This document shows positions 7,052 through 44,500 of a stretch of 64,000 nucleotides of DNA, in pieces. Source of the DNA: Magallana gigas (lineage: Eukaryota). Made by a program: the position numbers and the translations under genes. The stretch spans positions 38,936,001-39,000,000 of the forward strand of contig NC_088856.1 in NCBI RefSeq assembly GCF_963853765.1, read 5' to 3'. Positions within the stretch are counted from its first letter, which is position 1. The number at the start of each line of letters is the position of its first letter. Below the pieces are notes generated by a model. That model did not search any database. It was not told the DNA's origin and was given only the letters and a program-made list of their open reading frames with translations.

Positions 7052-8624
7052 TGTTATAGTGTAAATGTTAAAGTAAATCAATAACTTCACATGTCGGCTC
7101 GAACGCATTCCAGGTTGGTATTCCAACGCAACGGGATATAACCCTAACTGACATGTTAAGCACCACGACATTGTCAGCATTAAGATATCTTCGTTAATAT
7201 TCTCCGTCATATACAGCATACATGTACAATTTCTGTTTCTAAAGATTGGTTTTCCATGCTTGTTTTTGTCCATATTCTATAGGATATTTTTACGTGAAAA
7301 CGAATGACTTTCTTTTTTCGACTATGAGATATAAACCAACGAAGATGCTTCCTGATCTTTTATAAACCAATCTGTTTGATGTATTTTTCCGTGTCTGACT
7401 GTTACCTCTTCGTCTGTTACAGTCACTGTTGATCAGTTTTCCTTGACTTGTCACTGTGATATCATAAGGCCCAAAATGATATATAGTTGTTGGAGACCAT
7501 TTTATTTACAAACCCATGTTTATCAATAAATATATAAATATTTCCTCTTCACGGTCTGTTGTGAAAGTGAGTGAAATTTTAATTTTTGACAGTGAAAAAT
7601 GTAATTTTTTTATATGCCGCCCCCCCCCCATTATATTCGACTTTTCATGAACTTATGTGCTTGTGATAAAATGAGTGGTATCAAATCCGAATATATTTAC
7701 AGCATTTCGATTTAAAATTTTATCGTTTCTGTTTATAACAACTGTTGAAAGCATATTAGAATCAATTTACAAAATAAATTCTCCAAACAAAATTTAATTT
7801 GAATAGAATTATAATCATAGTATTTTTGAACAAATTAATATAAGTCCTCCGATTTTTTTATTTTTTTATTATTTTTTTTTTTTGGGGGGGGGGGGGGGTC
7901 TTATAGTATTATTTTTAGTGTATATACACATTAACACAAGGTTAAATAGAAACCAAAAAAAAAAATTTTTTGAAAGTATTATGATGCAATATACATTGCT
8001 GTAATGTGAAACCTAAAAACTGTGATTTTTTTTTGCCTGATAGATACGAAGAAAAAGTAGATAATGAGATTCAAAAATCATTCTTGAATCAAAATGATAA
8101 TCATTTGTATATTTATATTTTGCCCCCTAGAAATCCCCCAAAACACAGTATGTGTTATAATTTTTTTTTTTATTTCAACTCTTTTGGAAATATCAAAAAG
8201 AAATGTGTTCCAGTATACGATATTGAGGTAAGCTTTGTTGAATCTGTTTTTTAAAATTCAATTTCCTTCTATGTTATTTTCATTTCGAAATAGTTTTTGT
8301 TTTGCAATTAGTTCCAATTGTCTTTAACATTAGAATAGACTGACGTTAAATTTCACCTAATAATTTACAAATGACTAAGCGGAGAATGAAAGAAAGCTGA
8401 TATTCCCCTGATTGAACTTAGTTTCTTTACACTCAGACGGAAAACATCGATCATAGATAAATGTAACCAAACTTTTGTCAATAAACGTATTATATATGCA
8501 TTTTGTTATTACCTTAAACATTTTCTGATAAATGTTTTTTTTAGCCTATCTGATAATTAAGCACTAAACCAAATTTTACTTTTTTCCGCTGAGATTTCAA
8601 AAAGGCAAACCTCTCTCCAATGTG

Positions 8625-10473
8625 TTAAACTGCTATATTTGAGATCACTTCATAATGAACTGGTTCTGATAATCTGTCATTAGGACATTGATAACTATGC
8701 TTTTGAGAATGTCTTTTGTGTGTGATTTTGCGTACAAAAATAATTAAAAGTGCTATCAAAACTAAACCAACTATACAAATCATCGTTATGGACATGCTAT
8801 TTGAGTTAAACCAGGTTCTAAGCCGTTCCAGGAAAACATCATCACTAGATCCTTCTATATCAGGAGTCAGATTACCCATATTGTTCATCGTAATTGAAGA
8901 TGAGATGTCGTAAGGAGTATCTCTGTAGTCTTCACCTTTAGCGTAAACTTCATTTGTTGTTTCGTCTTCTATCCAAAAAAAAATATATAAAAACTTATTT
9001 TTTAAAAATATTAAGATATAATTTTTAGATAGCTAAAACCCAATAGAAAAAAAGGAAATGAATCATGTGGTAAGTAGAAAAAACAACCCTTTGATACTGT
9101 AAAAAGGGGGCGAAATTGATAAAACAAAAAATGGTAAAAAGTCTTTGCAAATCCTTTTTCGTACTTTTGCTTAATTAACTACATTCAGACTGATAATTGT
9201 AAACAAAAATTTAAAAAAAGTCTATAGGCCACATGGTTTACTCAAGCATTAAATTAAAAATTATCTATTAATAATCAATATTGGACTATTCTTTAGATAT
9301 GTCTTGGTTCAAACAAATGTAATTTATCGGCAAACACTTTAGCGCATGTAGGACTGCCTTATGACAGCTCATAGCTTTTAGATGAAATTCCAATGCATGC
9401 AGTTGACATACCTGAGATATAAAGAATCATTTTAATGAAATGATGTCATGATTTTCAAATAGTTAAGCGTTTAAAATAAATTATTAACTTAAATTAACAG
9501 CGCCAGACTGCACCTTCCTAATATCTCAGCAGTTTTCTGAGTACTTACCAGCTTATTAGTTGGTTTGTTAACTCAACATCCCTGCCGTTTCCTATTGGAT
9601 TCTTTAATTAACTTATTAACGCATGACATTCACAACTTATTCAATCATTGCCTACCTGTTTCCCCAACGTTTTCTTTAAAAACGAACTAAAATAGCCAAT
9701 GCAAACGAATTCGACCACTTTGAGTAAAGCAATTCGACACTGTACTCACTTGAACAACCTTTTGCAAAATCACATACTTCTTTAGAACATTGAGAACAAT
9801 TTTGTTGGCAACCAGAACCAAAACTAGGATATAAACAGGTTCTGTTACAATTGATTCCATAAAACCCTGGCTTACATCCTGAAATAGGAAACAATAAAAA
9901 AAGGAGGTTGAAACTTTGTTTAATGAACTTCTACAACCATCTGCATGGCTTTATACCCGTACTGTTTTTTTTTCATAGAGTACGAAAGTGTCAAAGGTAT
10001 TTAAAAATTGTGCATGGAATATGTTAGTTTAATTATGGAAATGGCACACTTTGTTTTAAAAAATAAGCTTACCTGTACAGTTTCCTAAAATTTCGTCCCA
10101 TTCATAGTCTGCACAACAGTTATTGTATCTGAAAAAAAATGTTTTTACTTATCTACAAAAAGACACTACATGTACCAAGCTAAAATGTACATTGAAATAT
10201 CTCTTTTGATCTAATTAATGTATCTAAAAGATCCCAAAGTTCAAAACCGTATAGTCTTTGTTTATTAATCGTTTGTCAATGGAAGATGATTGAAATTGAC
10301 AATCAACTTTTTAGCTATTAGAGATGTATATTACAAAGAGCCAAGCCCTAAAGTAAGTATGTGGCAATGCGTGTCACAGCAATGATGACGGAAGCACAAA
10401 ACAAAAAATCTTACCCTTTTTCTTGGCACTGAAAGGCACAGGTTTTAGCAACAAAAATCACGAAAATCAACAT
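8625..10473 (-). CDS. Gene A1: small type-I membrane receptor with one MEGF10/Draper/SCARF-like EGF module and a cytoplasmic ITIM-like motif (195 aa)
   Basis: Exons 10415-10473, 10073-10128, 9750-9878, 8625-8968, all GT-AG, phases 2/1/1, 588 nt, open. Protein: MLIFVIFVAKTCAFQCQEKG-YNNCCADYEWDEILGNCT-GCKPGFYGINCNRTCLYPSFGSGCQQNCSQCSKEVCDFAKGCS-KDETTNE...RTWFNSNSMSITMICIVGLVLIALLIIFVRK...EPVHYEVISNIAV*. Confidence 0.85.
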
Positions 10474-14479: not shown

Positions 14480-16066
14480 GAACTGTTTTTTTTATACCAC
14501 TACTAATTTAATGACTTTTAACAGTGACAATCAAACAATCTACATGCTGGACTTTTTTGTACATAGAAGGGTATAACAAGGGTATAACAAATTCCTCTAT
14601 TGAGAAACAATTATTCAAATTTTTACCTGTTGAAAGTATATTGACCAGTCAATATATTTGTTTAGTTTTGACCAGCTAGGAAAAGTATCCTATGGATGTC
14701 TCCACTTTTTCAGTAATTTCATTCTTATTTGTAGGTCCGTTGAATGAAACAAAAAAAAACCCGCTGCGATTCGAAAAAAGTGACGTTTTGGGGGCAAACA
14801 GTTAAGCTGGTAAGAAACAAAAAAAGTTGGTTATTTTTAACATGAGTATAAAGAGAAAGAAATTAATAACTTTTCACAAGTGTTAAATCTAATTTCAAAG
14901 CAGGTATTGAACGTTCTATTTATAGTTAATCAAAATATTTAGTCTATAAAAGTTGTTCAGTTATTGCATTTACTCAGGGATAAAAATATATATATATCTT
15001 TGCTGTCTTTATTAAGAGGCACAAGCTCAGCATTACAATGCTGCTTCCTCATTTTATGACAGTCCTTCTGAAAGGCATATCTCTTTTAAGTAATTAAAGA
15101 ATGATGGAATATTCTACAAAACAATATTAAAACATTTCACATTATTTTCAGAGATTTTATTAAAGTTGCAGTCAACATTTCCATTCAAATAATGTTAAAG
15201 TGGTCCATAAGTCAAGCATATTATTTAATATGATTGTGTATATTATATTTACATCATTCATTCTCTTGTTTAGCTGTTCTTTAAGCTGAAAAGGTAACAA
15301 GCAGGTTTAAACATTTAGTTGTTGAAGCTTTGTACATGAAAGAAGCCAACAACAATATGCTTCCATTGTATTTTGAATGACAAAAAATACTTACATTCCA
15401 TATGTTTTCAACATTGTCACATCAAAAAGCAAGTGTATAATATGTTTCGTTTGTTTACAATATACACCCTGACATTTTTTTTTCATACATACATTTTTAC
15501 ATAATGCATTATTTAAAAGCTTGTAACTGCTACTTGTTTATATTCAATATTTCTAATCATGCATTCATAAACATGTTTTTTTTCTAATGTTTCCCACCGT
15601 AAATTCCAAATCAATTACAGTCTTGATTTAAAACAGAGTGAACAGACACATTTTATATATCATTTAAAACATTTAAAACTAACTTATATGTTTAATTGAG
15701 ATGGTTTCATTTTCATGCAACGTGTTTTTTTTTTATTTCTGTGTTACATTTCTGCATTCACAATCACCAGTAATAACAGCTAAATAGTCATTACTACTAT
15801 CAACTTAACCCAAAAACCGTGTCATATAGATATTAGTTCATGTTTTCATTGATGTTCTTACCAAATCTCTAGTTAAATAGTTTAAAAAGCTATTATCATC
15901 AAGAAATTATTAGCCATATTCCACTGGATATGCATTCAATTAGGTTTTATAAAACTCGCCAAAATACACACTTGCACCATGTTACGTAAATAATTTCTTT
16001 TGAAGCTTTCAGTTTAAGCTGATGGCTTTTAAATTTATTCAAACATTTCCATTTTGTTAGTCATTG

Positions 16067-19000
16067 TCAGATTGATGAACCTTCTACCGTAGATAAAACT
16101 GTTATATTCAAAATTTCTTCATAATGTACTGGTTCTTGCATGCTGTCACCTGGAAGATTTTCTTTATTATGACAATTCAATATACACCTTTGTGAACATT
16201 TCTTACGTATCTGTTTATATGCAAAAACAATCATAAGTGTTATCAAAATCAAGCTAACTACAGAAACAACCATTATTGACATGCTATTTGTATTGAACAG
16301 TGTACCTAATATGCCATGGAGCAAGGTTTCTTTAGGTTTGCTTATCTCAACATTTTTATTTTCCATCTCAATAGTCTTATTATCCATCTCAGCAGTTTTA
16401 CTATCCATCTCAACAGTATTCTTCTCCATTTCAACAGTCTTATTATCCATTTCACCAGTCTTTTTATCCATCTCAACAGTATTATTATCAATCTCAACAG
16501 TCTTATTGTCCGTCCCTGACATGAGAACGGAAGTTATGACGTACATGGTCGTTGTCTTGTCTAAAAATAATTGAAACTTTTTAAATTAAAGACTGTATAC
16601 AGTATTACACTATGTTTTTTTCTTTTGCATACTAAAGGTTGTCAGTATAAAAGGCTATGTAAAAAAAAAAACCATTGCATTTGAAGTATTATCATAATGA
16701 ATATTTTTATGGGATTTTATGTTGTCGATTTTTTTTATCTTCATCAGCTTAAAAAGCATTTTATTTACTTTGATTATTTTTATATTATCTAAAAACAAAA
16801 GACTATATCTGTTGTATACGTATATGGGTGATAATCTATAACTACAAATATCCAACTTAGTTTGTGTGGAATTTTGTCTGATCTTGTAATAGCAAAAGAG
16901 TCGAACTGTATACTCTTAATTTATGAATACAATTATATATTTCCTTTTACAATGACATCAGACAAACCCACTTACTTGAACATCCAATCGCAATATCACA
17001 TTTTTCCAAAGGACAGTTGCACTTTTGCTGACAACCATTTCCAAAAAAAGGATACGTACAAGACTGACTGCAATTACCACCGAAATGCCCAGGCTTACAT
17101 CCTCAAAATATAACAAGATGAAAGCATATAATTTATGATATTAATACATGTTGGTAGGATGATATATTTGCTCCATATCATAGAATCATTAGGTAAATTT
17201 AAAAATGCCAATTGGTAATGTAAAACGTATTTTTATTAAGGGATATATTGGGGATGGCAACCGATTGCACAAGCTCTTAGATGTTAATTGCATTTCGTTC
17301 CAACTAATTAACCGTTTCTTGTATAAAAAAACATAGATTTTTGACATATGTGTACAATTACTTTAACTTATCTTAACAATGATCACTATACAAATAGTCA
17401 TTAAATATTTTTCCATGATTTTGTGGTCAGTTTAACTTCTTAAATTAAAAATATTCAAATTTTGTCCAAAACAAGGTTTACATTTGAATCTTCGTTTAAA
17501 ATAATATATATAGATAATATATTTGGATCTCATACATCATGCGCCTGTTCTAGTGAATTGCATTTTATGTAATGGATTAATGCCATGTTAAATGAAAACT
17601 TTAAGGTAAAATTAACACATTCAACGTACTAGTACCTGTAGCTGTAACGGACTCAACAGTGCTTGTTCCATTTGTTGACAATGAATGAAAAGTTAAGTAA
17701 AACAGGCAAGCACCTATTGTTGTTATAACATACAGGAACACCCATTACCTTCCACGATCTAAGCACTGGGACTTGAACAGTCTTTAATTTAACTTGATTA
17801 GAGAACAGCTTCGAAATTTAAAAATCAAAATTTCAATGAAATTGTGGTTAAAGGTATATCATTTTTATAGTATACGAGTAACCAATTACTATTTTTGTAA
17901 CCGGCTACTATCGTTCCAATCGAGTAATTGCTTGGTTCGAAATTGCCATCCCTAACATAATGTTTTATTAAGAAACTTACCTGAACAGTTTTTAGAGGTA
18001 CCGTAAAGGTTAAAAGCGGATTCCTGATAGCATTTTAGTGATGTTTTCCTGTGGATTAATGATTATTATTTTTAAAAAGAATAGATAGAATATAATAATG
18101 TATAAGTATAATATGATATGGGATTTCAGTAAAACGTTTCCATAAAAAAGTCGAGGTTATCAAAAATTATTTTAAAAAAAACCAATATGAAGAGAAATTG
18201 CGAGACTATCGGTGATATATTTTGCATAACACTGTCTTTAAAACGTTAGGTACATTGTTCCTGCGTTGTCAACAGAATTGTCATGAAAACAATATCTCAT
18301 TCAGTTTTATCATATTTCAAAAATCATGTTTGATATATCCCATTCAACAAACGAGGATAATACATGTTTTAATGATGACTATGCATGTTCCTTTTTTTTC
18401 AAGTACATGTATATCAACCAATACAATGTATTTTAATTAATTTTGTGTTTTTTCAAAGCGATGTTTTCATCCATATAATGTTGTTGAATTATGATCACAA
18501 AAAGGTGAACACATTCCAAGACCTGGATTAACGTTCAAGTTTTGGGTTTTTGATGTATTCAACGTATAAATATATTCGTAAAAGAGAAACACTAATATAG
18601 GTTTTCACACTGATTATCAACTGTTTTCAACTATTACACATAATGCAATTGGATACTGATATTTAGCATATAATTTGTATAAAATACAGGATTTTTGCAC
18701 CTCTGATATGAACACAGACAGGAGCTTTATCACACATCCTATATCATTACCTAATATTTCCCCCTTTATCACACCAAAAAGTTTCTTTCACATCCCTGGA
18801 ACACCTTTGCACTTTTCAATCGGAGTTCTTCTGATTTTTTTGGAAGCAGACGACGTCTTAAATTGTAAACAAATGCGATAGAGAAACGTTCTGCAAAAGA
18901 GTTCGAAATGGGAGAGATAACTTGAGAAATATTGGCTTGGAGAATCGGACGAAATAATAGGGTCAGAAAATTCTAGGGAAGACTATGTTATGAATATGCG

Positions 19001-22000
19001 AAATCCTATCACTTTTAAAAACACAATTACAGATGTAAACAAGGTTGTAAGCTGGCTGCAAAGTAAAAATGAAACTCGAAACTTTTGTGATATCCCTCCA
19101 GGGTAGATGAATGCCTACTTGGCCCAGTTTTTTTTAAGACTGCAAACAAACAGAATAGAGACCAGTATGAACCTGACACCCTTAAGTCAGTTCAATGCAG
19201 CATCAATCGTTCTTTGGATGAAAAGAGTTCGACTGTCAGTATAATTGAAGATAGGGGGTTCAAACATTCACGAGATGTGTTGCTGTCCACGAGCAGACCC
19301 CTTAACCCAACATGAAATTGACATTCTGTATTCCAAACATTTTCTCGGTGAAGGTATATAGGTTTATTTAAGGCATGCTAATTTTAGAATAGATAATCAC
19401 CTTCAAAGGGACATAAGTCATTTTTATGTGTTATTTACAGCAAATCCAAAGGCTTTAAGTAACACTGCCTGTCTAAAAAACTCAATGTACTTTGGTAAGC
19501 GTTCAAGAACTAAACATGTTATTCTTAGAACGAGAGACATTGAGCTGAAAGAAACATCAAAAGGTGACATATTCTTATAGTTGTATGAGAGAGCAACAAA
19601 AATACGCACGGAAGTGAAAGGGGACACTAGAACATTATTCCCTTAATGTTTTAAGACAAAGGTAAATATTTCGATAATTTTTATTTGCTCATCATTGTTA
19701 ATTTCAAATCTGAATTTGAACTGAAAGTATGAATTGTGTGTAGGTAACCCGATATGTCCGGTAGCGATGTACGTCTGATACAAATACAAAAGGCCCGATA
19801 AAATGCAAACCAAAGACTCGCCTTTCTATGTTGGAATAAACAGGAAACCGACGGGCAATTCGTGGTATCTGTCATAACATATGAGTAAAACCACACTAGG
19901 AAACATCATAAAGTTAATGTATGAATAAGCCTGTACACAAGGCCGAAAGGTTAACCATAGCATTAGAAAGACCGCCATTACAATTTTTGCACATGCAGAG
20001 ATTCCGTCAACTCTATTACATCAGCATTCTGGCCATAAAAACCCTTGCCTCGATTAACAATAACATTACTGCTTCTATCAATCAACAAAAAGGGATGCTA
20101 CTTAGCAGTTTTTCGGAAGGAGCCACAACAGAGGCATCAGAGAAAATCAACAACGATGTACACGAGGTGAACAATAATCTACCGGCGCTGAACAATGTTC
20201 TTTAAGAAATTGGGAACTACGAATTTCACAATGACTTTGTGAATAAACTTGTATGTCTCTGCATCGGTTTCACTTACCAAACTCTAAAGGTTATTTACCA
20301 GTGCAACGATTAATGGAAACGTAACAATCAATTTTGGGAAAGAATGAACCGTCGTAATAGGTAAGTGTTTTAGACAGTTTATTCTTGTTTTTACCTTTCT
20401 TCAAACTTGAATTTATTTAATGAAATAATTGTTACACTATAAATATATTATTTTTTTTAATTTGTGCTAGGCCCATGCCTCTTGGATAAATCAACAGCAA
20501 CAACAAAAGAGGATATTTAATAAAATAAGAATACACAAACATTTACACATTTTATTCAGATGAACATAATACCTATAGTGTCTTTAAACAAAAAGAAAGT
20601 TAATTTGCTTCCCTATTACATTTGTAGTTATTATTTCAATTATAAAATATAAAAAAAATTAATACATGAACATCTATATTACACTCCGTATCAACCCTCG
20701 ACCAATACCAGATGTTTGCATATCCCAGTTTATATCGAATAAGTTTAAGTGATTCTCCACCAAAACTATATTTCTAAATCACCATTTGAATTTCTTGTTT
20801 TTCTTTTTTTCAGATTTTAGCATAAATTATGTACTATATACTATAGATATTTTGTATTGATGCACAAAAGACGGTCAGCCAATATCTGTGTATATGCAAA
20901 AATGTATCAACCCTCGATCAATATCAGTCCTTGGGCTGATATTGGAGTCTCGAGGTAACATGTAATATTAGGTGTGATACAGATTTACCATTTATCATTC
21001 TCTAAATATTTTACGCTAATATTATTATTATATATATATATATATATTTAAGTATGCGCAATATGTTTTGGGCAACCCAAAGAATTTTACTCTTTTTTAA
21101 CATTACTGGGGACAATTTATATATTGTATAAGGAATCAAGCTTTATATGTCTTCGTGGAAGATAAAAGAGCCTCTTGCCAAATTGTTAACATGTGTTTGG
21201 CAAAATTTGCTCAAGAAAGTATAGCAATGCGTGTCCATATTCAGAGGAAAAGTTGAGGCTTTTTTATGCTAGACCATGCCAGCGTTAATTTGCAACATAA
21301 CCTCACAACTAAGTTGCTGATGGATGTATGAACCCCTTTAAAGCCGATAAACATCTTTGTCAATGTTGTTGAAGAGAAAATGTTCCCCTATAATAGAACT
21401 TTGAAATAGCATTTGGTTCATTTCATTCACTGATCGATATGGTGTGACACAAGTTCTTATTTTGTACAGCATATCGAGAAAATCGACATAATAAGTGAAC
21501 AGAAACAAGTATGAAAAGGGGAATTAACTGACCAGAAAATCAGAGTTCGAGAAGTTATTTAGTTATATGGATAACCAAGACATATTGCCCCATGACACAG
21601 TTTAATTTGCTTTCTTCCTAAAATCAAAGCCCGGGAATATGTGTCAATTTAGGATTAGCCTTACGCTGCTTATGAAAGAAACACACACCAAGGTAATGAT
21701 AGGGAGACATGCATATTTAAGCATGCCCATTTTACCATACACAGTCGAGATGGGATAAAATAAATCAAATGATGGTTGTTTGTTGCTGGAACTAATGACT
21801 TTACTTTAGTTCCAGCAACACCTTTGTATGTAAATGTAAACGTGCCTACTTCCCGGGTAAAGACATTTGCAAATTTCAAATCATAATCTTATCACTCAAA
21901 AAAGATTGTATAAATAACATATTATATACTGTAGCTTAATAAGGGAAAACAAATTTCCAAAAAAAAAAGCTGGTGGAGTTTTTTCTATTAATACAAGTGT

Positions 22001-24330
22001 TCAAATTGGATTCTCAGTTACATCATTAGTACTGAAATTATGATATTCAAACATTTTCCCCATTTAAGAGGCCTTTGGTTGTCTATATACAGAATAAAGA
22101 AATTTGGTTGTTAGTATACACCAATATGAAAGGCCATTTTGACAAAATTAACGTCATTTTCATGAAGACCAACACATTCCATCAAACTTAGCACAACCTA
22201 ATTATGATAGATATGTTTGCTAGACCAATTCGTTATTTTGTATTGTTATTTCTTTCCATCAAAGAGACTCTGAGACAAAAAATGATGAAATCTGGCTGTC
22301 CACCATCAATCTCTCACCAGAGGGCGAATTACGCTGCGCTACAACACCTCTGTAAACGTCTAAATGCCAAGGATCTTGACAAAACCCATTCTCAATCATG
22401 ATATTATAAATTATAGTTTTAAATGTATTCAGTCTACATTTCGATGTTAAAGCCTCGCTAAAACTATTGAAATAAAAAAATTTGTACCGGTAAATCACGG
22501 TAACAAACAAAGAACTATTTCTCGGAGTAATACTCCATTACCAATGTTTTCGTGGCACTACTTTTTAGACGTTAACAGAGGTACCGGTATAAGTGGAGCG
22601 AAGCAGGAACGATAACTCTGGGTAGAGATTGGTCCACCATTTTTAACTATTTATCGCGATCAACATTTTTTGTTTGACTCAGCACACTTTAGATAAAATG
22701 CTATGCTGAACGATTGTATAATCGTTTGTTGCCTTAATTTTTAAGACTTAAGAGAATTATAGAATTTGTCTGTCGACCAATTTGACCGCCATTTTGACCT
22801 AATAAACGCCATTTATGTCATAGTAAGCATATTTTTCAGACTAAGCACGCCTGAATTAATATGCAAAAATAATTTTGCTGGATTGAATTATTACTGTTTT
22901 TTATGCACGCGGGCATGTTAAAGTATGGATTTTACAGCGATGTGTAGAAAGTCACTTGTCACTACTTCATACGAAATGACGTCATAATTAACTTTGACGT
23001 CACGATCTGCATTCCTGTCGATAGTTCTTAGGGAATGTATCTTAACGCTAAAAGTGAATATTATATCAAAAATATAAATCCGCATGTTTCCTTTACGTAG
23101 GTGATGCCATTACATGTAATGCTAGACGTACAGAATTCATTCATATTAAAAATCAGTATCAAATAATCGGCAGTTTTAAAGCTTCGTTTTAAGTTTAAAG
23201 ACTATTTATAAACTATGGTTTGGAGACTCTCCCTGCTACGTGTAAACAACTGAATGAAGAAATTTTAATGCATGTAAAACCAGCTTGGCGCAGGTGAAAG
23301 ATCAACACAATTTTAGAATATTTTACGTAAAATTGGTAGAGAATATAAGTACCAATATGAATATTGCTTGTGAAACCTACGGATTTACATCGCTTTTGAT
23401 TAGTAAAAATGTGCATTATTTGATTGATTTTGTGGAATGTTCCAACAATATTTTCCATTAACGAAATATCTATTTCTTTCCCAAGCAAGAACTTCAGTGT
23501 ATATGAAATAACAAAGGATTTTTCTTAAAAATATGTATGATTTAATGCCATTTAATGTCATTAATCACCTGCGCCGATGCGATTTAAATAGATCATTTGC
23601 AAGGATTCGCCCGTCACGTGATTAAAAAGAACATATGACGTAACAAAAATGCATCAAATATAATTTAAACATCGGTGTCAATAAATGAAACATAGATTTT
23701 AAGAAATACCCTCGGTCAAAGTATTTTTGCGATGATTCAAATAATATCGTTTTCCAGCCGTAATTTAGCATCGTGACGCCTTAACATTGCTGCGCATATT
23801 CCCTAGTTTAAATTTTTGAAATTATAAAATATGGGTATTTGCCATTTTGTATCGCCATGTTTACCCAATTAACGCTTTTTTGGGAAGGCCAGCAAATTTT
23901 TTCAAACTTTGATATAGATATAATAAAATACTAAGCTGGATCATTTCATTATTGTTTGTCAATGATGAAAAAACTTTAAGAAAAAACTATAAAATTACGT
24001 TGTCCGCCATTTTGAATCGCCATTTTGAGCTACTTAACGTCATTTTCATGAAGGCCAGCATATTTTTTGGAATCAGCACACTTTAATTATGTTAAGAAAC
24101 CATGCTGGACCAAATAATAATTATTTGCCGTTAAAAGTTTGTTTTTCGACTAAATCGGACTAGACTATGATATATTGTTAAATAATGATTTACATGACGT
24201 AAGATTATTTAAAAAACTGAATTTAGTCTTACCCCTTTATGCTATTGCAGCAGGTTTCAGTCAATGCTAATGTCAGAATAATCAATATTGAAACATTTAT
24301 GGAAAACCAATTGTCCAAACGTACTCCCAT
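16067..24330 (-). CDS. Gene B1: EGF-module type-I membrane receptor with heptad-repeat stalk and ITIM-like motif (261 aa)
   Basis: Exons 24233-24330 (identical copy at 27955-28052), 17981-18048, 16976-17101, 16067-16560; GT-AG, phases 2/1/1, 786 nt, open. Protein: MGVRLDNWFSINVSILIILTLALTETCCNSIKG-KTSLKCYQESAFNLYGTSKNCS-GCKPGHFGGNCSQSCTYPFFGNGCQQKCNCPLEKCDIAIGCS-NKTTT...(DNKTVEM)x8...GTLFNTNSMSIMVVSVVSLILITLMIVFAYK...EPVHYEEILNITVLSTVEGSSI*. Confidence 0.8.
16343..16510 (-). repeat. Coding 21-bp tandem repeat x8 (heptad DNKTVEM) in the B1 stalk
   Basis: TCAACAGTCTTATTATCCATC-like units; translation DNKTVEI DNNTVEM DKKTGEM DNKTVEM EKNTVEM DSKTAEM DNKTIEM ENKNVEI. Confidence 0.9.
18944..20110 (+). 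pseudogene. Decayed Crypton-type tyrosine-recombinase transposon ORF (DUF3504/ZMYM-KCTD1-like), inside B1 intron 1, antisense to B1
   Basis: The + strand translates to NPITFKNT..WLQSKNETRNFCDIP..YLAQFFL..QYEPDTLKSVQCSINRSL..FKHSRDVL..ADPLTQHEIDILY..FLGE / MYFGKRS..LYERATKIR / CPVAMY..KRPD..DSPFYVGIN..WY..GRKVNHSIRKT..SGHKN.ASINN. It has several stops and frameshifts and two GT-AG introns (19354-19440, 19662-19743). Recognised from family motifs; no search was run. Confidence 0.8.
20689..20990. mobile_element. Probable terminal region of the Crypton-type element: hairpin plus direct repeat
   Basis: Hairpin CAATATCAGTCC-TT-GGGCTGATATTG (20919-20944) inside CCTCGA...TCGAGG; direct repeat TATCAACCCTCGA(C/T)CAATA at ~20689 and ~20905. 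Confidence 0.45.
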
Positions 24331-27300: not shown

Positions 27301-28492
27301 GCGATTTAAATAGATCATTTGCAAGGATTCGCCCGTCACGTGATTAAAAAGAACATATGACGTAACAAAAATGCATCAAATATAATTTAAACATCGGTGT
27401 CAATAAATGAAACATAGATTTTAAGAAATACCCTCGGTCAAAGTATTTTTGCGATGATTCAAATAATATCGTTTTCCAGCCGTAATTTAGCATCGTGACG
27501 CCTTAACATTGCTGCGCATATTCCCTAGTTTAAATTTTTGAAATTATAAAATATGGGTATTTGCCATTTTGTATCGCCATGTTTACCCAATTAACGCTTT
27601 TTTGGGAAGGCCAGCAAATTTTTTCAAACTTTGATATAGATATAATAAAATACTAAGCTGGATCATTTCATTATTGTTTGTCAATGATGAAAAAACTTTA
27701 AGAAAAAACTATAAAATTACGTTGTCCGCCATTTTGAATCGCCATTTTGAGCTACTTAACGTCATTTTCATGAAGGCCAGCATATTTTTTGGAATCAGCA
27801 CACTTTAATTATGTTAAGAAACCATGCTGGACCAAATAATAATTATTTGCCGTTAAAAGTTTGTTTTTCGACTAAATCGGACTAGACTATGATATATTGT
27901 TAAATAATGATTTACATGACGTAAGATTATTTAAAAAACTGAATTTAGTCTTACCCCTTTATGCTATTGCAGCAGGTTTCAGTCAATGCTAATGTCAGAA
28001 TAATCAATATTGAAACATTTATGGAAAACCAATTGTCCAAACGTACTCCCATTGTGTTACAGTCACCTTACCTCTTCAAGTCTACTGCACTAGCACTATA
28101 TTTTACATTTTGTTAATTAGAAACAGGGAAAAATTAAATACGCAATAGCATAAAGACTTATCTACAAATCTACATGAATTTATTTCAGAATTTAGTCTAA
28201 TACGCCCTACAAAAGTACAGGGAAATTATTTCAATCAGCAGGAAATGCTTTACAATTAATAAAACTTTGCATAATATTACAACATGTGTGTAGAGGGGAA
28301 CAACACTGTTTTAATTCGAAGTTTTTGTTTGTTTGTTTTAATTTTCCTTTGGTATTTGTTGTTTTGGGTATTTGGTTTTTTTTTGGTTTTTTTTTTTTTT
28401 GGGGGGGGGGGGGGTTGTTGTTTTTTTTTGCAACGTCAACAAACCTTTATATAAAAACAAATTACCGTTATTATATAACGGTTGCAAATGTT
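21047..28492. repeat. Near-identical tandem duplication, two units of ~3722 bp (about 21047-24769 and 24770-28492)
   Basis: ORF-track entries recur at an offset of 3722. By eye the units differ at one substitution (21766 C vs 25488 T) plus homopolymer lengths. The left edge abuts a short (TA)n run. Confidence 0.95.
27955..28052 (-). CDS. Second, identical copy of B1 exon 1 (signal peptide), alternative first exon
   Basis: ATG at 28050-28052, MGVRLDNWFSINVSILIILTLALTETCCNSIK-GG|GTAAG donor, phase 2, compatible with the acceptor at 18048. Confidence 0.7.
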
Positions 28493-33058: not shown

Positions 33059-34079
33059 CAATTTTATTATGCATCCAATTATTTCTGCAACTTTGTTTTT
33101 AAATAAATTATTTTTATGATTATTTTTTTCAAGTATGTTTGCATTAATGCAATTTTTAATGCAATTTTTATTTATTGACATATACCATTGAACGTCAAAA
33201 AATTCATTTCTTGACTCCATTTTAGTGCATCTTTTAAATCATTACCTCATCATTTGAGACATCCCCTGTGAAACAGTGAAACGTTCCTTAGAACGAGTTG
33301 GGTCTGTTAAACATGAATGAATGTTAAAAATTTGTACATTTCTTAATTGGTTTTCTTAAATGTTTAGTGCTTTTAATCAATATTTTGCCCTAAAGAGGAT
33401 CATTTCTCATTTGCCTAATTGAGCATATTATCTTTTATAAAGATTGTATTAAAGTCCCCTTAAATTGTGTAAATTGAATTGTCTTTTTCTTGTAGGTGGG
33501 AGGGTCCGGCGGAGTTGAATATTATAAGATGCGAAACCATCTTCACTTTTAAAACACACATTCCAATAATAGATGAAGAGAAAAAAATATTAGATAGGAA
33601 AAAACAGCAAAGTAAACAAGCTATATATTTCATTACTAATAGTTTTAAAAAATTCTTTGCACGTATCGTTTTATTATATATCTATATATAAACAATACCT
33701 AAATTTATGCAAATAAAATTGAAGATGAAATTTAACAGAAACTAAATGAAATTAATAAAGAAGCCGATAATGATAATTGATGTTTTCCTTGAAGTCATTT
33801 ATGAATTTATGAATATTAATTCTGAACGTACGTCATAACGTCATCGAAATACTATAAACGACGCTATGTTTGAGGGACTACAAAATGAAAACGATAAAAG
33901 ATATTCACAAAAAACAAACTGTTTTACAACCAGCATATTGTCAAGGTATCCCATTTTAAATTTTATTAATTTTGGTTACAGGGCCGATTATGCGTCTTGC
34001 CGTGTCAATTCTTTAGCACTAAACCAAATTTTACCTTTTTTATGCTGAGAACTCAAAAAGGCAAATCACTTTCATTGCA

Positions 34080-35859
34080 TTAAACTACTATATTTGAGAT
34101 CACTTCATAATGAACTGGTTCAGATAATCTGTCATTTGGACATTGATAACTATGCTTTTGAGAATTACTTTTGTGTATCATTTTGAGTATAAAAATAATC
34201 AACAGTGCTGTCAAAACTAAAACAACTATGCATATCATTGTAATTGACATGCTTTTTGAGTTAAACCAGGTACTAAATTGTTACTCATATTGTCCATTGC
34301 AAATGCAGATATTATGTTGAAAGGAGTAGCTCTTTAGTCTCTCACATCATCTTTCGCGTAAACCTCATTTGTTGTTTCATCTTCTATTAAAAAGTGCGAA
34401 CATTATTAGCATCTTTTTAAAAAAAATCTGAAGATATATCTTTAGACAGCCTACAAAAAAAATGAAAATTTAGCAGGTGGTAAGTGACGACACAAGCCTC
34501 CTTTGATAGAGTTAAAAGGGGCAAAATTGGTAAAAATGTCTTTGCAATTTTTTTCAAAACTATCGCTTGATTAACTATACAGACTGACAATTGTGAAAAA
34601 ATCAAGAGGTGTATTGGCCACATGTTTTTCTAAAAACAAAAATTAAATGGTATCCCTTATTGATCAATTTTGGACTATTCCTCAGATATATAGGCAATCA
34701 CTTTGGTGCAGGTAGTACCATCTCATGACAGCTCATTACCTTTTTATGCAATTCCACTGCATGCATTTCACATACCAGAGATATAGAGAATCATTCTAAT
34801 GAAATGATATCATGATTTTTGACTATCATATCTAAACATTAAGAAGAAACATATTTATGTAAATTAACAGTATCAAACTGTACCTTCCTAATAGCTCAGC
34901 AAATTGCTGAGTACTTAAAAGCTAATTATTTGGTTTGTAAACTTAACATCCCGGCCGTTTTCTATTAAATTCTATAATTAACTTACTTATGTATGACATC
35001 TCAACTTATTCAATCATTTATTAATTGTATTCCCAATATTATCGTTAAATACAATCTAAAATATCCAATGCAAACACATTCGACCACTTTGAGTAAAGCA
35101 ATTCGACATTGTACTCACTTGAACAACCTTTGCAAAATCACATACTTCCTTAGAACAGTTACACATTTGTTGGCAACCATAACCAAACATAGGATATATA
35201 TAGGTTATGTTACAATTTATTCCATAAAACCCCGGCTTACATCCTGAAATAGAAAACAATAAGAAAGTAGGTTAAAACTTTGTTTAATGCTCTTATACAA
35301 TCATCTGCATGGCTTTATACCGTCCTGTTGTTTGTTTTTTTTATAGTACGAACGTGTCAAAGATATTTAAAAATTGTAAATGGAATATGTATGTTTTACT
35401 TAATAAAGAAACTGCACCCTGTGTTTTAAAAAATAAGCTTACTTGTACAGTGTCCTTGAATTTTGTCCCATTCATAGTTTGCACAACAGTTATTGAATCT
35501 GAAAAATGTTTTTACTTATTTACAAAGATACACTACATGTACCAAAGTTAAAATGTACATTGAAATATCTCTGTTGATCTGATTAATGTATCTGAAAGAT
35601 CTCAAAGTTCAAAACTGTATAGTCGTTGTTTATTCATCGTTTGTCAAAGGTAGATGATCGAAATTGACAATCAACTTCTCAGCTATTATAACAGATGTAT
35701 ATTTCAAAATGCAAAGCCTTAAAGTCAATATGAGACAATAATACGTATTACAGTAAGGATGACGATGATCATAGCACAAAACGAAAAATCTTATCCTTTT
35801 TCTTGGCACAGAGTGGCGTAGGTTTCAGCAACAAAAATCATGAAAATCAACATGACCAT
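34080..35859 (-). pseudogene. Gene A2: pseudogenised paralog of A1
   Basis: Exons 35795-35859, 35443-35498, 35119-35243, 34080-34383. Lesions: exon-1 donor GT>AT (35794), Cys>Tyr and a 1-nt deletion in exon 3 (125 nt), TAC>TAA at 34334-34336, and a ~46-nt frameshifting deletion at 34280/34281. The TM and EPVHYEVISNIVV* coding remain recognisable. Confidence 0.85.
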
Positions 35860-36019
35860 GTCAGGAGAAAGAAAATACCATATAAACTCTTCGTTACTTT
35901 TCCAAAATAAAAACAGTTTGTGTCGACATAACAATGAGAATTCAACACATTTCAAAGTGAAACTATTTCCCTAAACTTGTTTCATAGCGAAACACTGTAC
36001 ATTTATAATAATGGTTTTT

Positions 36020-40442: not shown

Positions 40443-41596
40443 TATTAAATCCAATTTGAAAACAGGTATTGAATGTTTTATTTATAGTTGATTATAATGT
40501 TTAGTTTATACAAGTTGTTCAGTTATTGTATAATAACTGAACAACTTGTATAAATTGAAATAGTGGATAAATAATTAAAAAAAAAAAGCTTTGTTGTTTT
40601 TTGGAGGCACATGCTCAGCATTACAGTGCTGCTTCTCCATTTTATGACTGTCCTACTAAAAGGCAGGTTTATTTAAAGTAATTAAAAAATAATGGAATAT
40701 TTTACAAAACGATAATAAAACATATCACATCATTTTCAGAGATTTCATTAAAGTTGCCATCAACATTTTCATTCTGAAACGTTGAACTGATCAGTAAATC
40801 AAGCTAATTATTTAACATTATTGCAAATACTATATTGAATTACATTTATTTTCTTCTTTAGCTGTTCTATAAGCTGAAAAGGTAACAAGCAGGTTTAAAC
40901 ATTTATTTGTTTTAGCTATGTACATAAAATACTTACTTACATTCCATATGTTTCAACATGGTCACATTCAAAAAGCAAGTGTATTACATTTTCCTTTTGT
41001 TCAATGTACATCCTGACATCCTTTTTTCAATTTTTCTGACACACATACATTTTTACATAACGCATTATTTAAAAGCTTGTAACTGCTACTTGTTTATATT
41101 CGATATTTCAAATCATGCATTCATAAACATGGTTTTTTTTCTAATGTTTCCCACCGTAAATTCCAAATCATTTACAGTCATGATTTAAAACAGAGTGAAA
41201 GGACAACATTTATATATCATTTAAAGCATTTAAAACTAACTAATATGTTTAATTGATGCAAAATGGGTTTTTTTAATTTCTGTGTTACAGTTCTGCATTC
41301 ACAATAACCAGGAATAACAGCTAAATAGTCATTACTGCTAACAACTTAACCCGAAAACCGTGTCATATAGATATTAGTTCATGTTTTCATTGATGCTTGT
41401 ACTAAATCTCTAGTTAAATAATTTAAAAGCTATTATCACCAAGAAATTCTTTGCCATATTCCACTGGATATGCATTCAATTAGGTTTTATAAAACTCGCC
41501 AAAATACACACTTGCACCATGTTATGTAAATAATTTCTTTTGAAGCTTTCTGTTTAAGCTGATGGCTTTTAAATTTATTCAAACATGTTCGTTTTA

Positions 41597-44500
41597 TTAG
41601 TCATTGTCAGATTGATTAACTGATTCATGACCTTCTACCGTAGATAAAACTGTTATATTCAAAATTTCTTCATAATGTACTGGTTCTTGCATGCTGTTAT
41701 CTGAAAGATTTTCTTTAGTATGACAATTCAATATACGCCTTTGTGAACATTTCTTTTGTATCAGTTTATACGCGAAAACAAACATCAGTGTTATCAAAAT
41801 CAAGCTAACTACAGAAACAACCATTATTGACATGTTATTTGTATTAAACAGTGTACCTAATGTGTCCTGGAACAAGGTTTCTTTAGATTGGCTTATCTCA
41901 ACAGTCTTATTATCCATTTCAACAGTCTTATTATCCATCTCAGCAGTTTTATTATCCATTTCAACAGTCTTTTTATCCATCTCAACAGTCTTATTAACCA
42001 TTTCACTAGTTTTGTTATCCATCTTAACAGTCTTATTATCCATTGCTGAAATGAGAACGGAAGTTATGACGTACATGGTCGTTGTCTTGTCTAAAAATGA
42101 TTGAAGCTGTTTAAAGTATGTATACCGTATTACACAATGTTTTGCTTTTGTGGTGTTGTGCACTAGACTAAAAGGTTATCAGTATAATAGGCTATGTAAA
42201 AAAAACCTTAAAACAGACAAAAAGTAAACGGTTACCTTTTGTTTACTTGCATATGACGTATTATGAGTATTTTGTTTTTTGCTTTGTTTTTTTTTTTTTG
42301 GGGGGGGGGGGGGCGGGGGGGTTATCTGCATCACCTTACAGAAATCATTTTCTAATAATTATTTCTATACTATCTAAAAACAAAAGACCATATCTGCAGT
42401 ATTTGTATATAGGTGATAATCTATAACTATCCAATAACTATCGAACTTAATTTGTATGGAATTTTATCTGATCTTGTAATAACAAGAGATTCGAAGTGTA
42501 TACTCTTAATTTATGAATACAATATCTTTCCTTTTACGTTGACATCAGACACACCCACTTACTTGAACATCCAATTGAAAAATCACATTCTTCCTCAAGA
42601 CAGATGCACATATGCTGACAACCAGCTCCAAAATAAGGATATTTACAAGGTTGACTGCAATTATTACCGTAAAACCCAGGCAAACAACCTAAAAAAAAAA
42701 ACAAAAACAAGATAAAAACATATAATTTATGATATTTATACATGTTGGTAGAATGATACAGTTGTTCCATATCATAGAATCATTGGGTCAATTTTAAAAT
42801 GACAATCGGTAATGTAAAACGTATTTTTATGAAGAGATATATTGGGGATTCCAACCGATTGCAGAATTTCTTTCATGTTATTCACAATTCGTTCCAATTA
42901 ATTAACCGTTTCTTGTATAAAAACAACATAAAGTTTTGAAAGATATGTAAAGTTACTTTTAAATGATTTTAACAGTGATCATAATAAAAACGATACGAAT
43001 ATTCTATGTATTTGTATATCAAAATTTTATAGAAAACTTTCATCCAATGATTGTTTTTCAAGAACATATCTACAACAACGAGCAAATAGTCAATATATAG
43101 TTTTCCACATGTCATGATTTTGTGCTCAGTTAAACTTCTTAACTAAAAAATATTCAAATTTTGTCCAAGACAAGGTTAACATGTAAATCTTCGTTTAAGA
43201 TAATATGTTTGGATTTCATACATCATGTGCCTGTTTTAGAAAATAGCATTATAATTTTATGTAATGGATTAATGCCATGTTAAATAAAAACTTTAAGGTA
43301 AAATAAACACAAATATACCCGTACCTATAGCTGTAACGGACTCATCAGTGCTTGTTCCATTCATTAACAATTATTGAAAAGTTAAGTATAGCAGGCAAGC
43401 AGTTATTGTTGTTGTTATAACATACAATAACACCTACAGACCCATTATTTTCCGTGATCTCAGCCCTGGGACCTAAACAGTCTCTTATTTAACTTGATTA
43501 AATAACAGCTTCGAAATTTAAAACTCAAAATTGAAATGAAATTGCGTTTAAATAATTATCATTTTCATTTTATCCGAGTAACCAATTACTATTTTTGTAA
43601 CCGGCTACCAACGATCTGATCGAGTAACCGATTAGAAATTGCCATCTCTAACATATATACAATATTTTTTTATTAAGAAACTTACCTGCACAGTTTTTAG
43701 AGGTTTCGTTCCAAACGGATTCCTGATGACATTTATGTGGCGTTTTTCTGTGGATTAATGAAATGAAGTTTCAAGCAAAATGAGCTTCAATTTTTATGCT
43801 GAAACCTTTTTTAGAATTTTTACTAAAATGACAAAACATGTCATGGTTTTTTAATTTCCGATAGCATTTTGGGGGAAAAGGCGTTCAGAAGCCTTAATTG
43901 AAGCAAGATTGAATTAATGTCGTCCTGTACAAAAATTAAATTGATATATATTACTTAGAAGAGAAATCTTTCTTCTGACAAAAATTAATGAATTTTTTAA
44001 AGGGGCATGGTCACGATTTTGATCGAAAATTATTTTTTCGATTTTAATGTTTACAATGCTTCAGTAAGGCATTTTTAATAGGCAACCAAAATTTGATTGT
44101 CATTTGTTGCGTTATAAGCGAGTTACAGAGCTTACAATTCTTCGCTATGTAAACAAAGCTTTTGTTTACATTTTGAATGTTGAAGTGAAAATTCAAGTTT
44201 TAGACCCCAAATGAATGTGTTAATCGTTAGTAACTGTTTATTTATGCTAAAAATGAATAAAAAGATAGACAAATCAGCTTGAAAAAGATTTTTTACTGGT
44301 ATATTGTACCTATGTAAACAAAAACAGGGCACGAGCCTTGTTTACATGACGAAGAATTGTGAGCCCTGTATCTTGCTTAAAACTCATTGACTGGCACCCA
44401 AATTTCATTTGATCATTACAAATGCATTCCTAAAGCATTGTAAATAATAAAAACAGAAAAATAAAATTTGACCAAAATCGTGACCATGCCCCTTTAAAAC

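What the first reader, a model, noticed from the sequence alone, without database searches (positions are those of the whole stretch)
8643..8660. EPVHYE[V/E]I is invariant in all five copies while the ectodomains diverge
Seen: EPVHYEVI in A1, A2 and A3 and EPVHYEEI in B1 and B2. Stalks, exon 2 and the surrounding tail residues differ widely. V-H-Y-E-(V/E)-I matches the ITIM consensus (S/I/V/L)xYxx(I/V/L). A fixed signalling motif with a variable recognition end is the pattern expected of a receptor repertoire with a shared output.
Basis: partly seen in the sequence, partly recalled or inferred. Interest (0 to 1): 0.7.

Follow-up and report, generated by a model that had tools for sequence, protein, structure and literature searches.

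The report
Conserved tyrosine motif in oyster receptors
Five neighbouring oyster genes for small single-pass membrane receptors (one now broken) all keep one short tyrosine motif, H-Y-E-x-I, in their inner tail while the rest of the protein drifts; it is a real, selected signalling or sorting site, but whether it is inhibitory (an ITIM) cannot be told from sequence.

Summary
EPVHYEVI (A1, A2, A3) and EPVHYEEI (B1, B2) lie on the minus strand in the last exon of five tandem genes. These are the only five such loci in the 564-Mb genome. RNA contigs show that A1 is spliced and encodes a type I membrane protein of about 195 aa. A2 is a probable pseudogene, so only four copies are informative.

The motif is the best-conserved 8-residue window of the protein. 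In codon tests, synonymous divergence is the same everywhere (pS about 0.5). Non-synonymous divergence falls from 0.28-0.39 in the flanks to 0.12 in the motif and 0.035 at H, Y, E and I. It is kept in Crassostrea, Saccostrea and Ostrea relatives.

The outgroup genes have long tails with three to four further tyrosine motifs. The window's genes are truncated versions that keep only the first one, and relics of the lost tail lie past the stop codons.

The ITIM label is only formal. The defining -2 position varies (V, I, A, N), while H(-1) and E(+1), which are not part of an ITIM, are the most constrained. The ancestral form is YEEI, the classic Src-family SH2 ligand. I read it as a phosphotyrosine docking site of unknown sign; a YxxPhi sorting signal stays open.

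The parts
8643..8666 (-). A1 motif EPVHYEVI. The finding's 8643-8660 is VHYEVI.
8625..8968 (-). A1 exon 4 coding part: stalk, membrane span ITMICIVGLVLIALLIIFV, tail RKITHKRH...SEPVHYEVISNIAV and the stop codon. The 3' UTR continues to at least 8300.
   Evidence: RNA contigs and splice joint 8968/9750; translation
9750..9878 (-). A1 exon 3: EGF-like Cys-rich unit CKPGFYGINCNRTC...GCS
   Evidence: splice joints; boundaries; translation
10073..10128 (-). A1 exon 2: YNNCCADYEWDEILGNCT
10415..10473 (-). A1 exon 1 coding part: signal peptide MLIFVIFVAKTCAFQCQEK. Transcript contigs reach at least 10501.
16112..16135 (-). B1 motif EPVHYEEI
16067..16560 (-). B1 exon 4: heptad NKT stalk (8 x 21 nt), membrane span, tail and stop codon. 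A 10-nt deletion relative to B2 changes the last residues to EGSSI.
16976..17101 (-). B1 exon 3 (EGF-like unit), placed by homology and canonical splice sites
17981..18048 (-). B1 exon 2 (KTSLKCYQESAFNLYGTSKNCS), by homology to C. gigas LOC117682126
24233..24330 (-). B1 exon 1 (MGVRLDNWFSINVSILIILTLALTETCCNSIK). An identical second copy lies at 27955-28052, inside a 3.7-kb tandem duplication.
15772..15792 (-). Relic NDYLAVI in the B1 3' UTR. It corresponds to the C-terminal NDYLTVI motif of long-tail relatives.
34083..35859 (-). A2, a probable pseudogene. Its motif at 34098-34121 is intact. Lesions: in-frame TAA at 34334-34336, a 46-nt deletion in the stalk, a 1-nt deletion near the end of exon 3, and a Cys-to-Tyr change in the EGF unit.
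41663..41686 (-). B2 motif EPVHYEEI
41597..42090 (-). B2 exon 4: 7 heptads, membrane span, and a tail ending ...STVEGHESVNQSDND. Upstream exons are 42563-42688, 43686-43747 and 47237-47334; intron 1 holds the N gap 45926-46143.
41313..41333 (-). Relic NDYLAVI in the B2 3' UTR
52456..52479 (-). A3 motif EPVHYEVI
52438..53730 (-). A3 gene: exons 53666-53730, 53292-53344, 53007-53132 and 52438-52778, placed by homology and canonical splice sites. The reading frame is intact.

Best explanation
**What it is.** The motif is the one surviving phosphotyrosine docking site in the cytoplasmic tail of an oyster-specific family of small type I membrane receptors. Each protein has a signal peptide, a CC..W..C segment, one MEGF10/PEAR1-like EGF unit, a glycosylated stalk, one membrane span and a short disordered tail.

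**How it arose.** The ancestral tail, still present in Saccostrea and Ostrea, carried four to five tyrosine motifs: HYEEI, YSPL, (YEN), GYQLP and DYLTV. In the Crassostrea lineage, nonsense and frameshift changes cut the tail. The five genes of this window keep only the first, membrane-proximal motif. Selection holds H-Y-E-x-I fixed while the ectodomain and the rest of the tail drift or diversify.

**Inferred mechanism.** On ligand binding or clustering, a Src-family-type kinase phosphorylates the tyrosine. pY-E-(E/V/M)-I then binds an SH2 protein. The invariant Glu at +1, Ile at +3 and the ancestral YEEI make a Src-family or Fes/Syk/Shc-type SH2 the more likely reader than SHP-1/2 or SHIP. 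The sign of the output is therefore open.

**Shown versus inferred.** Shown: gene structure, expression of A1, conservation, purifying selection and tail truncation. Inferred: phosphorylation, the reader protein and the output.
For: - **Gene model and expression.** Splice joints with GT..AG ends appear in RNA contigs of two runs (X1 and X4, one study). A run from a second study (X7) covers the last exon.
- **Topology.** The protein has an N-terminal signal peptide, NKT sequons in the stalk, one hydrophobic span and basic residues after it. AF2 models only the membrane helix with confidence and leaves the tail unstructured.
- **Copy number.** Only five loci in the genome carry the module.
- **Selection, A versus B.** In the motif, pS is 0.64 and pN is 0.05. 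In the tail before it, pN is about 0.45.
- **Selection, 14 intact sequences.** pS is 0.45-0.57 in all regions. pN is 0.12 in the motif and 0.035 at H, Y, E and I, against 0.28-0.39 in the flanks. Synonymous variants occur inside the motif (CCA/CCG, GTT/GTA, ATC/ATT/ATA), so the constraint acts on the protein and not on the DNA.
- **Family-wide pattern.** Y and E(+1) are present in 29 of 29 contexts, H(-1) in 27 and I(+3) in 27. The -2 position is V, I, A or N.
- **Long-tail relatives.** These are Saccostrea echinata LOC133187787 and Ostrea edulis LOC125654500.
- **Truncation.** The only matches of those relatives in this genome are these five loci. Similarity runs through the present stop codons. 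An NDYLAVI relic lies in both B 3' UTRs, at the distance expected from the long tails.
- **Literature.** pYEEI is the best-binding ligand of the Src SH2 domain, and SHP2 N-SH2 needs a hydrophobic pY-2 (PMC7337045). Megf10/Draper receptors signal through Src-family kinases and Syk/Shark (PMC8092387).
Against: - No phosphorylation or binding data exist for any family member.
- Most copies do satisfy the ITIM pattern, so an inhibitory reader is not excluded.
- The motif also satisfies YxxPhi.
- SH2 preferences come from vertebrate domains; the review cited (PMC7337045) itself stresses that such preferences are only 10- to 100-fold.
- The link to MEGF10/Draper rests on NCBI names and an Atlas feature score of 0.82-0.86, which is only a lead. 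No Pfam model reaches its threshold.
- Expression was checked for A1 only.
- Some relatives lost the motif (P0021, P0024) or have Thr at +3 (P0001), so it is not indispensable in every copy.
Confidence: 0.45

Rival explanations
1. It is a true ITIM. The phosphorylated V-x-Y-x-x-I recruits an SH2 phosphatase (a SHP-2/Corkscrew or SHIP homologue). The short-tail receptors then act as inhibitory partners, much as Draper-II relates to Draper-I.
For: All five window copies and 23 of 29 family contexts fit (S/I/V/L)xYxx(I/V/L). The motif is the sole retained tyrosine site after loss of the other, potentially activating ones. There is a precedent in the same receptor superfamily: Draper-II binds Corkscrew through an ITIM (PMC8092387). 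ITIM-SHIP signalling is reported in C. gigas for CgNCAM1 (PMC11841013).
Against: The -2 residue is Ala in C. gigas XP_034307242 and related sequences, and Asn in Ostrea edulis. SHP2 N-SH2 needs a hydrophobic pY-2 (PMC7337045). The invariant Glu at +1 and His at -1 are not ITIM features; from my own knowledge of characterised ITIMs, +1 is mostly A, S, T or V. There is no hydrophobic residue at +5. The motif pre-dates the truncation and sits in long tails next to several other tyrosine motifs, so it did not arise as an inhibitory switch.
Confidence: 0.2
2. It is a YxxPhi sorting signal. Unphosphorylated Y-E-x-I binds the mu subunit of AP-2 or AP-3 and drives endocytosis or lysosomal delivery of the receptor and its cargo.
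For: YE(V/E/M)I fits YxxPhi. Tyr and the +3 Ile are the two positions such signals need, and both are near-invariant. The tyrosine sits at a constant 24-34 residues from the membrane. From my own knowledge, acidic +1 residues occur in lysosomal GYxxPhi signals such as CD63 GYEVM. An uptake or scavenger role would suit a MEGF10/SCARF-like ectodomain.
Against: Invariance of H(-1) and E(+1), and the strong bias for E/D at -4, go beyond what mu-subunit binding is known to need. Lysosomal GYxxPhi signals usually lie 6-9 residues from the membrane, not 24-34 (own knowledge). This reading is not exclusive of phosphotyrosine docking.
Confidence: 0.2
3. There is no function. The identity is left over from recent duplication or gene conversion among tandem copies, or it reflects a constraint on the DNA or RNA near the stop codon.
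For: A1, A2 and A3 are identical in nucleotides over about 33 nt around the motif, with no synonymous difference. The pseudogene A2 keeps it too. Runs of 24 or more identical nt are expected by chance in the A1/A2 alignment at 85% identity.
Against: A and B copies differ at synonymous sites inside the motif at the background rate (pS 0.64), while non-synonymous change is about 9-fold lower than next door. The same holds over 14 sequences. The motif is kept in other genera in genes with quite different flanks and ectodomains, some of them mucin-like.
Confidence: 0.05

Closest known systems
Megf10 / Draper / CED-1 / PEAR1 engulfment-type receptors
   Same: They are single-pass type I proteins with an N-terminal Cys-rich segment, PEAR1-type EGF units, and a cytoplasmic tail whose output runs through tyrosine motifs read by SH2 or PTB proteins (PMC8092387). 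NCBI names two members 'MEGF10'. Atlas features place the family next to these (0.82-0.86). Draper has a long activating isoform and an ITIM-bearing isoform.
   Different: This family has only one EGF-like unit and about 195-330 aa, against 600-1100 aa. No Pfam EMI or EGF model reaches its threshold. The tail has no NPxY and no ITAM spacing. Tail motifs cannot be aligned to those of Draper or MEGF10. The short form arose by genomic truncation, not by splicing.
ITIM-bearing inhibitory receptors (KIR, Siglec, PECAM-1, and oyster CgNCAM1 in PMC11841013)
   Same: There is a formal match to (S/I/V/L)xYxx(I/V/L) in a cytoplasmic tail. Ectodomains vary while the tail motif is fixed. The genes form a clustered tandem family.
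   Different: The -2 position is not held (A or N in some members). +1 is invariably Glu and -1 is His. There is a single motif with no second ITIM or ITSM. No Ig domains are present. No binding data exist.
pYEEI-type Src-family SH2 ligands (hamster polyoma middle-T EPQpYEEI; transmembrane adaptors such as LIME and PAG)
   Same: The B copies and all outgroup relatives read YEEI, the best-binding Src SH2 sequence (PMC7337045). Acidic residues lie upstream. The long-tail relatives look like transmembrane adaptors with five tyrosine motifs (compare LIME, PMC2194117, abstract only).
   Different: The A copies read YEVI or YEMI. No palmitoylation-type CxxC lies next to the membrane. The ectodomain is a folded Cys-rich unit rather than a stub. 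Binding is untested.

Membership tests
ITIM (immunoreceptor tyrosine-based inhibitory motif) | Sequence (S/I/V/L)-x-Y-x-x-(I/V/L) | tested here: met
   All five window copies read V-H-Y-E-(V/E)-I. Across relatives only 23 of 29 distinct contexts fit: -2 is Ala in 5 and Asn in 1, and +3 is Thr in 1.
ITIM (immunoreceptor tyrosine-based inhibitory motif) | Lies in the cytoplasmic tail of a membrane receptor | tested here: met
   Signal peptide, glycosylation sequons before the span, basic residues after it, and tyrosine 26-32 residues after the span in the window copies. Topology is inferred, not measured.
ITIM (immunoreceptor tyrosine-based inhibitory motif) | The defining positions are the ones under selection | tested here: inconclusive
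   Y and +3 are constrained, but -2 is not strictly so. The strongest constraint includes the non-ITIM positions -1 (His) and +1 (Glu).
ITIM (immunoreceptor tyrosine-based inhibitory motif) | The phosphorylated motif recruits SHP-1/2 or SHIP and inhibits an activating signal | not testable with these tools
   Needs phosphopeptide pull-down and functional assays. The machinery is reported in C. gigas (PMC11841013).
pYEEI-class SH2 docking site | Y-E-E-I, or Y-(acidic/hydrophilic)-x-(I/V) | tested here: met
   B1, B2 and all Saccostrea/Ostrea and mucin-type relatives read YEEI. The A copies read YEVI or YEMI. E(+1) is present in 29 of 29 contexts. The preference is cited from PMC7337045.
pYEEI-class SH2 docking site | Tyrosine phosphorylated and bound by a Src-family (or similar) SH2 domain | not testable with these tools
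   No data.
YxxPhi adaptor-protein sorting signal | Y-x-x-(bulky hydrophobic) in a cytoplasmic tail, accessible and at least about 7 residues from the membrane | tested here: met
   YE(V/E/M)I lies 24-34 residues from the span in a tail modelled as disordered. Binding to mu subunits is not testable here.
Megf10/Draper/CED-1 family | EMI domain plus multiple EGF/NIM repeats recognised by family models | tested here: not met
   No Pfam model reaches its threshold on the exons or on full-length relatives. There is one EGF-like unit only. The PDB sequence search gives one weak hit, 6u11_A at E = 0.014. The Atlas score of 0.82-0.86 is only a lead. The family works like this one but is not shown to be a member.
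Megf10/Draper/CED-1 family | NPxY and/or ITAM in the tail | tested here: not met
   There is no NPxY. The second Tyr of A tails (SYQCP) has Pro at +3, so there is no YxxL/I-x(6-12)-YxxL/I.

The most novel reading that the evidence does not exclude
In Crassostrea, truncation of a multi-tyrosine, probably activating tail created a small cluster of single-motif receptors. These would act as inhibitory or decoy counterparts of an engulfment/recognition pathway. That would be a genomic version of the Draper-I/Draper-II switch, with ectodomains under diversifying selection (B1/B2 ectodomain dN/dS 1.45). The pair would be an invertebrate example of activating and inhibitory receptor evolution by tail loss.
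Probability: 0.12. Interest if true: 0.6.

Novelty: new member of a known kind. Interest (0 to 1): 0.38.

Why it matters
Bivalves have expanded hundreds of small MEGF10-like receptors whose signalling is almost unstudied. This locus gives a clean, testable case. It is a lineage-specific family with one short linear motif that is clearly under purifying selection. Its history is documented, from a multi-tyrosine tail cut down to a single site. The ectodomains evolve at or above the neutral rate. Identifying the SH2 or adaptor protein that reads pY-E-x-I would show whether such receptors activate or restrain oyster haemocyte responses. It would also help annotate many 'uncharacterized' or mis-named 'MEGF10' and 'Tie-1' proteins. 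It is not a new principle: conserved tyrosine motifs on variable receptors are well known.

Tried and rejected
- **Pfam.** Scans of each exon and of full-length relatives gave nothing above threshold.
- **PDB sequence search.** One weak EGF hit only.
- **Structure.** AlphaFold2 of the C. gigas A-type protein with an 11-row alignment gave mean pLDDT 42, with only the membrane helix modelled. I ran no fold search, because matches to such a model would be meaningless.
- **Literature.** A search for the three LOC identifiers found no paper. 'MEGF10 oyster tyrosine cytoplasmic' gave nothing specific.
- **EPVHYE elsewhere in the genome.** There are two other hits (L011, L017). They lie in unrelated open frames without a membrane span, so they are chance matches.
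- **Long-tail paralogues in this genome.** None found. The only hits were the five loci themselves.
- **ITAM reading** (SYQCP...HYEVI). Rejected, because +3 of the first tyrosine is Pro.
- **Gene conversion or DNA-level constraint.** Rejected on the synonymous-site evidence.
- **Source species of the Logan and ENA relatives.** Not resolved; only run or sample accessions were returned.
- **Joined spliced protein.** Exons were searched one by one by reference. Reading-frame continuity was checked from splice phases and from annotated relatives.
Full report
**1. The observation**

Reading 8400-8900 and translating the minus strand gives a membrane span followed by RKITHKRHSQKHSYQCPNDRLSEPVHYEVISNIAV and a stop. 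A six-frame scan finds EPVHYE five times, all on the minus strand. EPVHYEVI is at 8643-8666 (A1), 34098-34121 (A2) and 52456-52479 (A3). EPVHYEEI is at 16112-16135 (B1) and 41663-41686 (B2).

The ITIM pattern alone occurs 519 times in the window's six frames. The match to the pattern carries little weight; the conservation is what matters.

**2. The locus**

The window is AT-rich, with about 31% G+C. It holds a roughly 25.5-kb segmental duplication: 8557-18662 matches 34012-45921 at 77-86% identity. That gives the order A1-B1-A2-B2-A3.

Protein, profile and degenerate-DNA searches of the whole 564-Mb assembly find this membrane-span-plus-tail module only at these five loci. Two other EPVHYE strings elsewhere are chance matches.

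**3. Gene model and expression**

RNA contigs from two runs of one study show three GT..AG introns in A1. A run from a second study covers the last exon and the 3' UTR. After resolving the stated one-base ambiguity of the joints, the exons are 10415-10473 (coding part), 10073-10128, 9750-9878 and 8625-8968. Splice phases are consistent.

The product is about 195 aa. It consists of:
- a signal peptide;
- the segment YNNCCADYEWDEILGNCT;
- one eight-Cys EGF-like unit;
- a stalk of about 55 aa;
- one membrane span;
- a 35-aa tail.

A3, B1 and B2 have the same exon plan with canonical splice sites and open frames. These models were placed by homology to annotated Crassostrea proteins. B genes have a stalk of 7-8 heptads, (D/E)NKTVEM, and a first exon 6-10 kb upstream.

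Exons were searched by reference.

**4. A2 is probably dead**

Relative to A1 and to its intact C. angulata counterpart (P0008), A2 has four lesions:
- an in-frame TAA at 34334-34336;
- a 46-nt deletion in the stalk;
- a 1-nt deletion near the end of exon 3, which lies in an A run and could be an assembly error;
- a Cys-to-Tyr change.

A1 and A2 are as similar in introns (0.80-0.88) as in exons (0.82-0.90). Its intact motif is therefore not evidence of selection.

**5. Selection on the motif**

Among the four intact copies, EPVHYE(V/E)I is the best 8-residue window of the whole protein. It has 7 of 8 invariant columns, while the Cys scaffold reaches 5 of 8 (shuffle P = 0.033).

Nei-Gojobori counts between A and B give the following:

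| Region | pS | pN |
|---|---|---|
| Motif | 0.64 | 0.05 |
| Tail just before the motif | 0.44-0.53 | about 0.45 |
| Cys-rich exons | 0.41-0.72 | 0.27-0.34 |

I then fetched DNA for ten relatives and compared 14 intact sequences. Synonymous divergence is flat across regions, at 0.45-0.57:

| Region | pN | pN/pS |
|---|---|---|
| Motif (8 residues) | 0.12 | 0.26 |
| Core H, Y, E, I | 0.035 | 0.07 |
| Before the membrane span | 0.36 | 0.69 |
| Membrane span | 0.28 | 0.61 |
| Juxtamembrane tail | 0.39 | 0.68 |
| The four residues after the motif | 0.35 | 0.67 |

Synonymous variants occur inside the motif, so the constraint is on the protein. The young B1/B2 pair has dN/dS of 1.45 in the Cys-rich exons and 0.09 in the membrane span.

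**6. Relatives**

Word-based searches with the last exons found A-type and B-type proteins in C. gigas (LOC105338848, LOC117682126), in C. angulata ('MEGF10', LOC128161252) and in many transcript assemblies. Cluster look-up added C. gigas XP_034307242 'MEGF10 isoform X1', which reads SDSAHYEMISNIAV.

A profile search of 1.84 billion representatives found 19 proteins. They include Saccostrea echinata LOC133187787 (312 aa) and Ostrea edulis LOC125654500 (320/333 aa). These have the same CC..W..C-plus-EGF ectodomain; some unidentified relatives have a Thr-rich mucin-like one instead. They share the same membrane span and a tail of about 130 aa after the first tyrosine. That tail holds (E/S)(P/E/S)(V/I/N)HYEEIS, then YSPL, (YEN), EGYQ(L/I)P and (D/E/V)YLTV(I/L).

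Over 29 distinct contexts the motif reads:

| Position | Residues |
|---|---|
| -4 | E 24, D 4 |
| -3 | P 19, S 6 |
| -2 | V 17, I 6, A 5, N 1 |
| -1 | H 27 |
| 0 | Y 29 |
| +1 | E 29 |
| +2 | E, V, M, D |
| +3 | I 27, V 1, T 1 |
| +5 | N 21 |

**7. The short tails are truncations**

The long-tail proteins match nothing in this genome except these five loci. The alignments run through the present stop codons. In B tails, GHES(V/F)(N/H)QS(D/N)(N/I)D lines up with NRYSPLQQSNMD of the long tails, with the tyrosine lost.

About 350 nt after HYEEI, which is the spacing seen in Saccostrea, both B 3' UTRs still read SSNDYLAVI. This corresponds to the terminal NDYLTVI motif. In A genes the stop falls eight residues after the tyrosine, and GERF(A/V) follows where the long tails have NRYSPL.

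The motif of the finding is therefore the only tyrosine site that selection kept.

**8. What it most likely does**

A linear motif in a disordered tail with an invariant tyrosine is best read as a phosphotyrosine docking site. However, the pattern of constraint is H-Y-E-x-I, with a loosely held -2.

SHP2 N-SH2 needs a hydrophobic pY-2, whereas pYEEI is the best ligand of the Src SH2 domain (PMC7337045). Receptors of the Megf10/Draper kind are phosphorylated by Src-family kinases and read by Syk/Shark. An ITIM-bearing Draper-II isoform recruits Corkscrew (PMC8092387), so both signs have precedent. ITIM-SHIP signalling is reported in C. gigas (PMC11841013).

A YxxPhi sorting role fits Y and I but does not explain H and E. 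I give these weights:
- 0.45 to SH2 docking of unknown sign, leaning to a Src/Fes/Syk/Shc-type reader;
- 0.20 to a true ITIM;
- 0.20 to a sorting signal;
- 0.05 to no function;
- the remaining 0.10 stays unassigned.

The first three are not mutually exclusive.

**9. Comparison and novelty**

The family has no Pfam model, no paper and inconsistent database names: 'MEGF10', 'Tie-1', 'uncharacterized'. Atlas features put it among mollusc-only clusters (0.95) and near MEGF10/PEAR1/Draper (0.82-0.86, a lead only).

It works like a small Draper/MEGF10-type receptor but fails that family's membership tests: no EMI or EGF model hit, no NPxY and no ITAM. A conserved tyrosine motif on a variable receptor is a known kind of thing, and this is a new, uncharacterised member.

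That agrees with the general picture. I did not test that locus, and my own-genome searches did not link it to this family.

**10. Limits**

The closest annotated proteins are from C. gigas and C. angulata at 65-94% identity per exon. I call it a Crassostrea (Magallana) oyster.
- Expression was verified for A1 only.
- Pairwise codon counts ignore phylogeny.
- All statements about kinases and SH2 readers are inference.

Noticed in passing
21047-24769 and 24769-28492: A head-to-tail 3.7-kb tandem duplication at 99.92% identity. It duplicates the first exon of B1 (24233-24330 and 27955-28052) and its upstream region. It is either a very recent duplication or an assembly artefact. A related copy at 89% identity lies at 47163-50182, upstream of B2.
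   Followed up: partly
34083-35859 (A2): A2 carries a nonsense codon (TAA at 34334-34336, where relatives have Tyr), a 46-nt deletion, a 1-nt deletion in an A run and a Cys-to-Tyr change. Its C. angulata counterpart (P0008) has an intact ectodomain, so A2 is a young pseudogene or a null allele.
   Followed up: yes
15772-15792 and 41313-41333: NDYLAVI is still readable in the 3' UTRs of B1 and B2, about 350 nt after the HYEEI motif. It matches the C-terminal NDYLTVI motif of Saccostrea and Ostrea long-tail relatives. It could be a relic, or part of an unrecognised alternative last exon.
   Followed up: partly
16977-17099 vs 42564-42686 and 17982-18035 vs 43687-43734: The Cys-rich exons of the young B1/B2 pair have 27.5 non-synonymous against 4.5 synonymous differences (dN/dS 1.45). 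The juxtamembrane tail has 7.5 against 0.5. Their membrane spans are almost identical. This suggests diversifying or relaxed selection on the ectodomain.
   Followed up: partly
16070-16100 vs 41600-41640: B1 has a 10-nt deletion relative to B2 just after the motif. Its C-terminus is therefore ...STVEGSSI instead of ...STVEGHESVNQSDND, the form shared by B2 and most relatives.
   Followed up: no
16344-16511 and 41895-42044: The 21-nt (heptad) stalk repeat has 8.0 copies in B1 and 7.0 in B2. Relatives range from about 2 to 9 copies. This is the subject of another first-stage note (s1-399463).
   Followed up: no
P0021, P0024, P0001 (relatives, not in the window): Some transcript-derived relatives have lost the motif: P0021 fuses MQE to 3' UTR-like sequence, and P0024 reads IPKTGSL in its place. 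P0001 has Thr at +3. The motif is therefore dispensable in some copies or alleles.
   Followed up: no
45926-46143: An assembly gap (218 N) lies inside intron 1 of B2. It was left untouched.
   Followed up: no
56442-56528: A perfect (TA)43 microsatellite.
   Followed up: no
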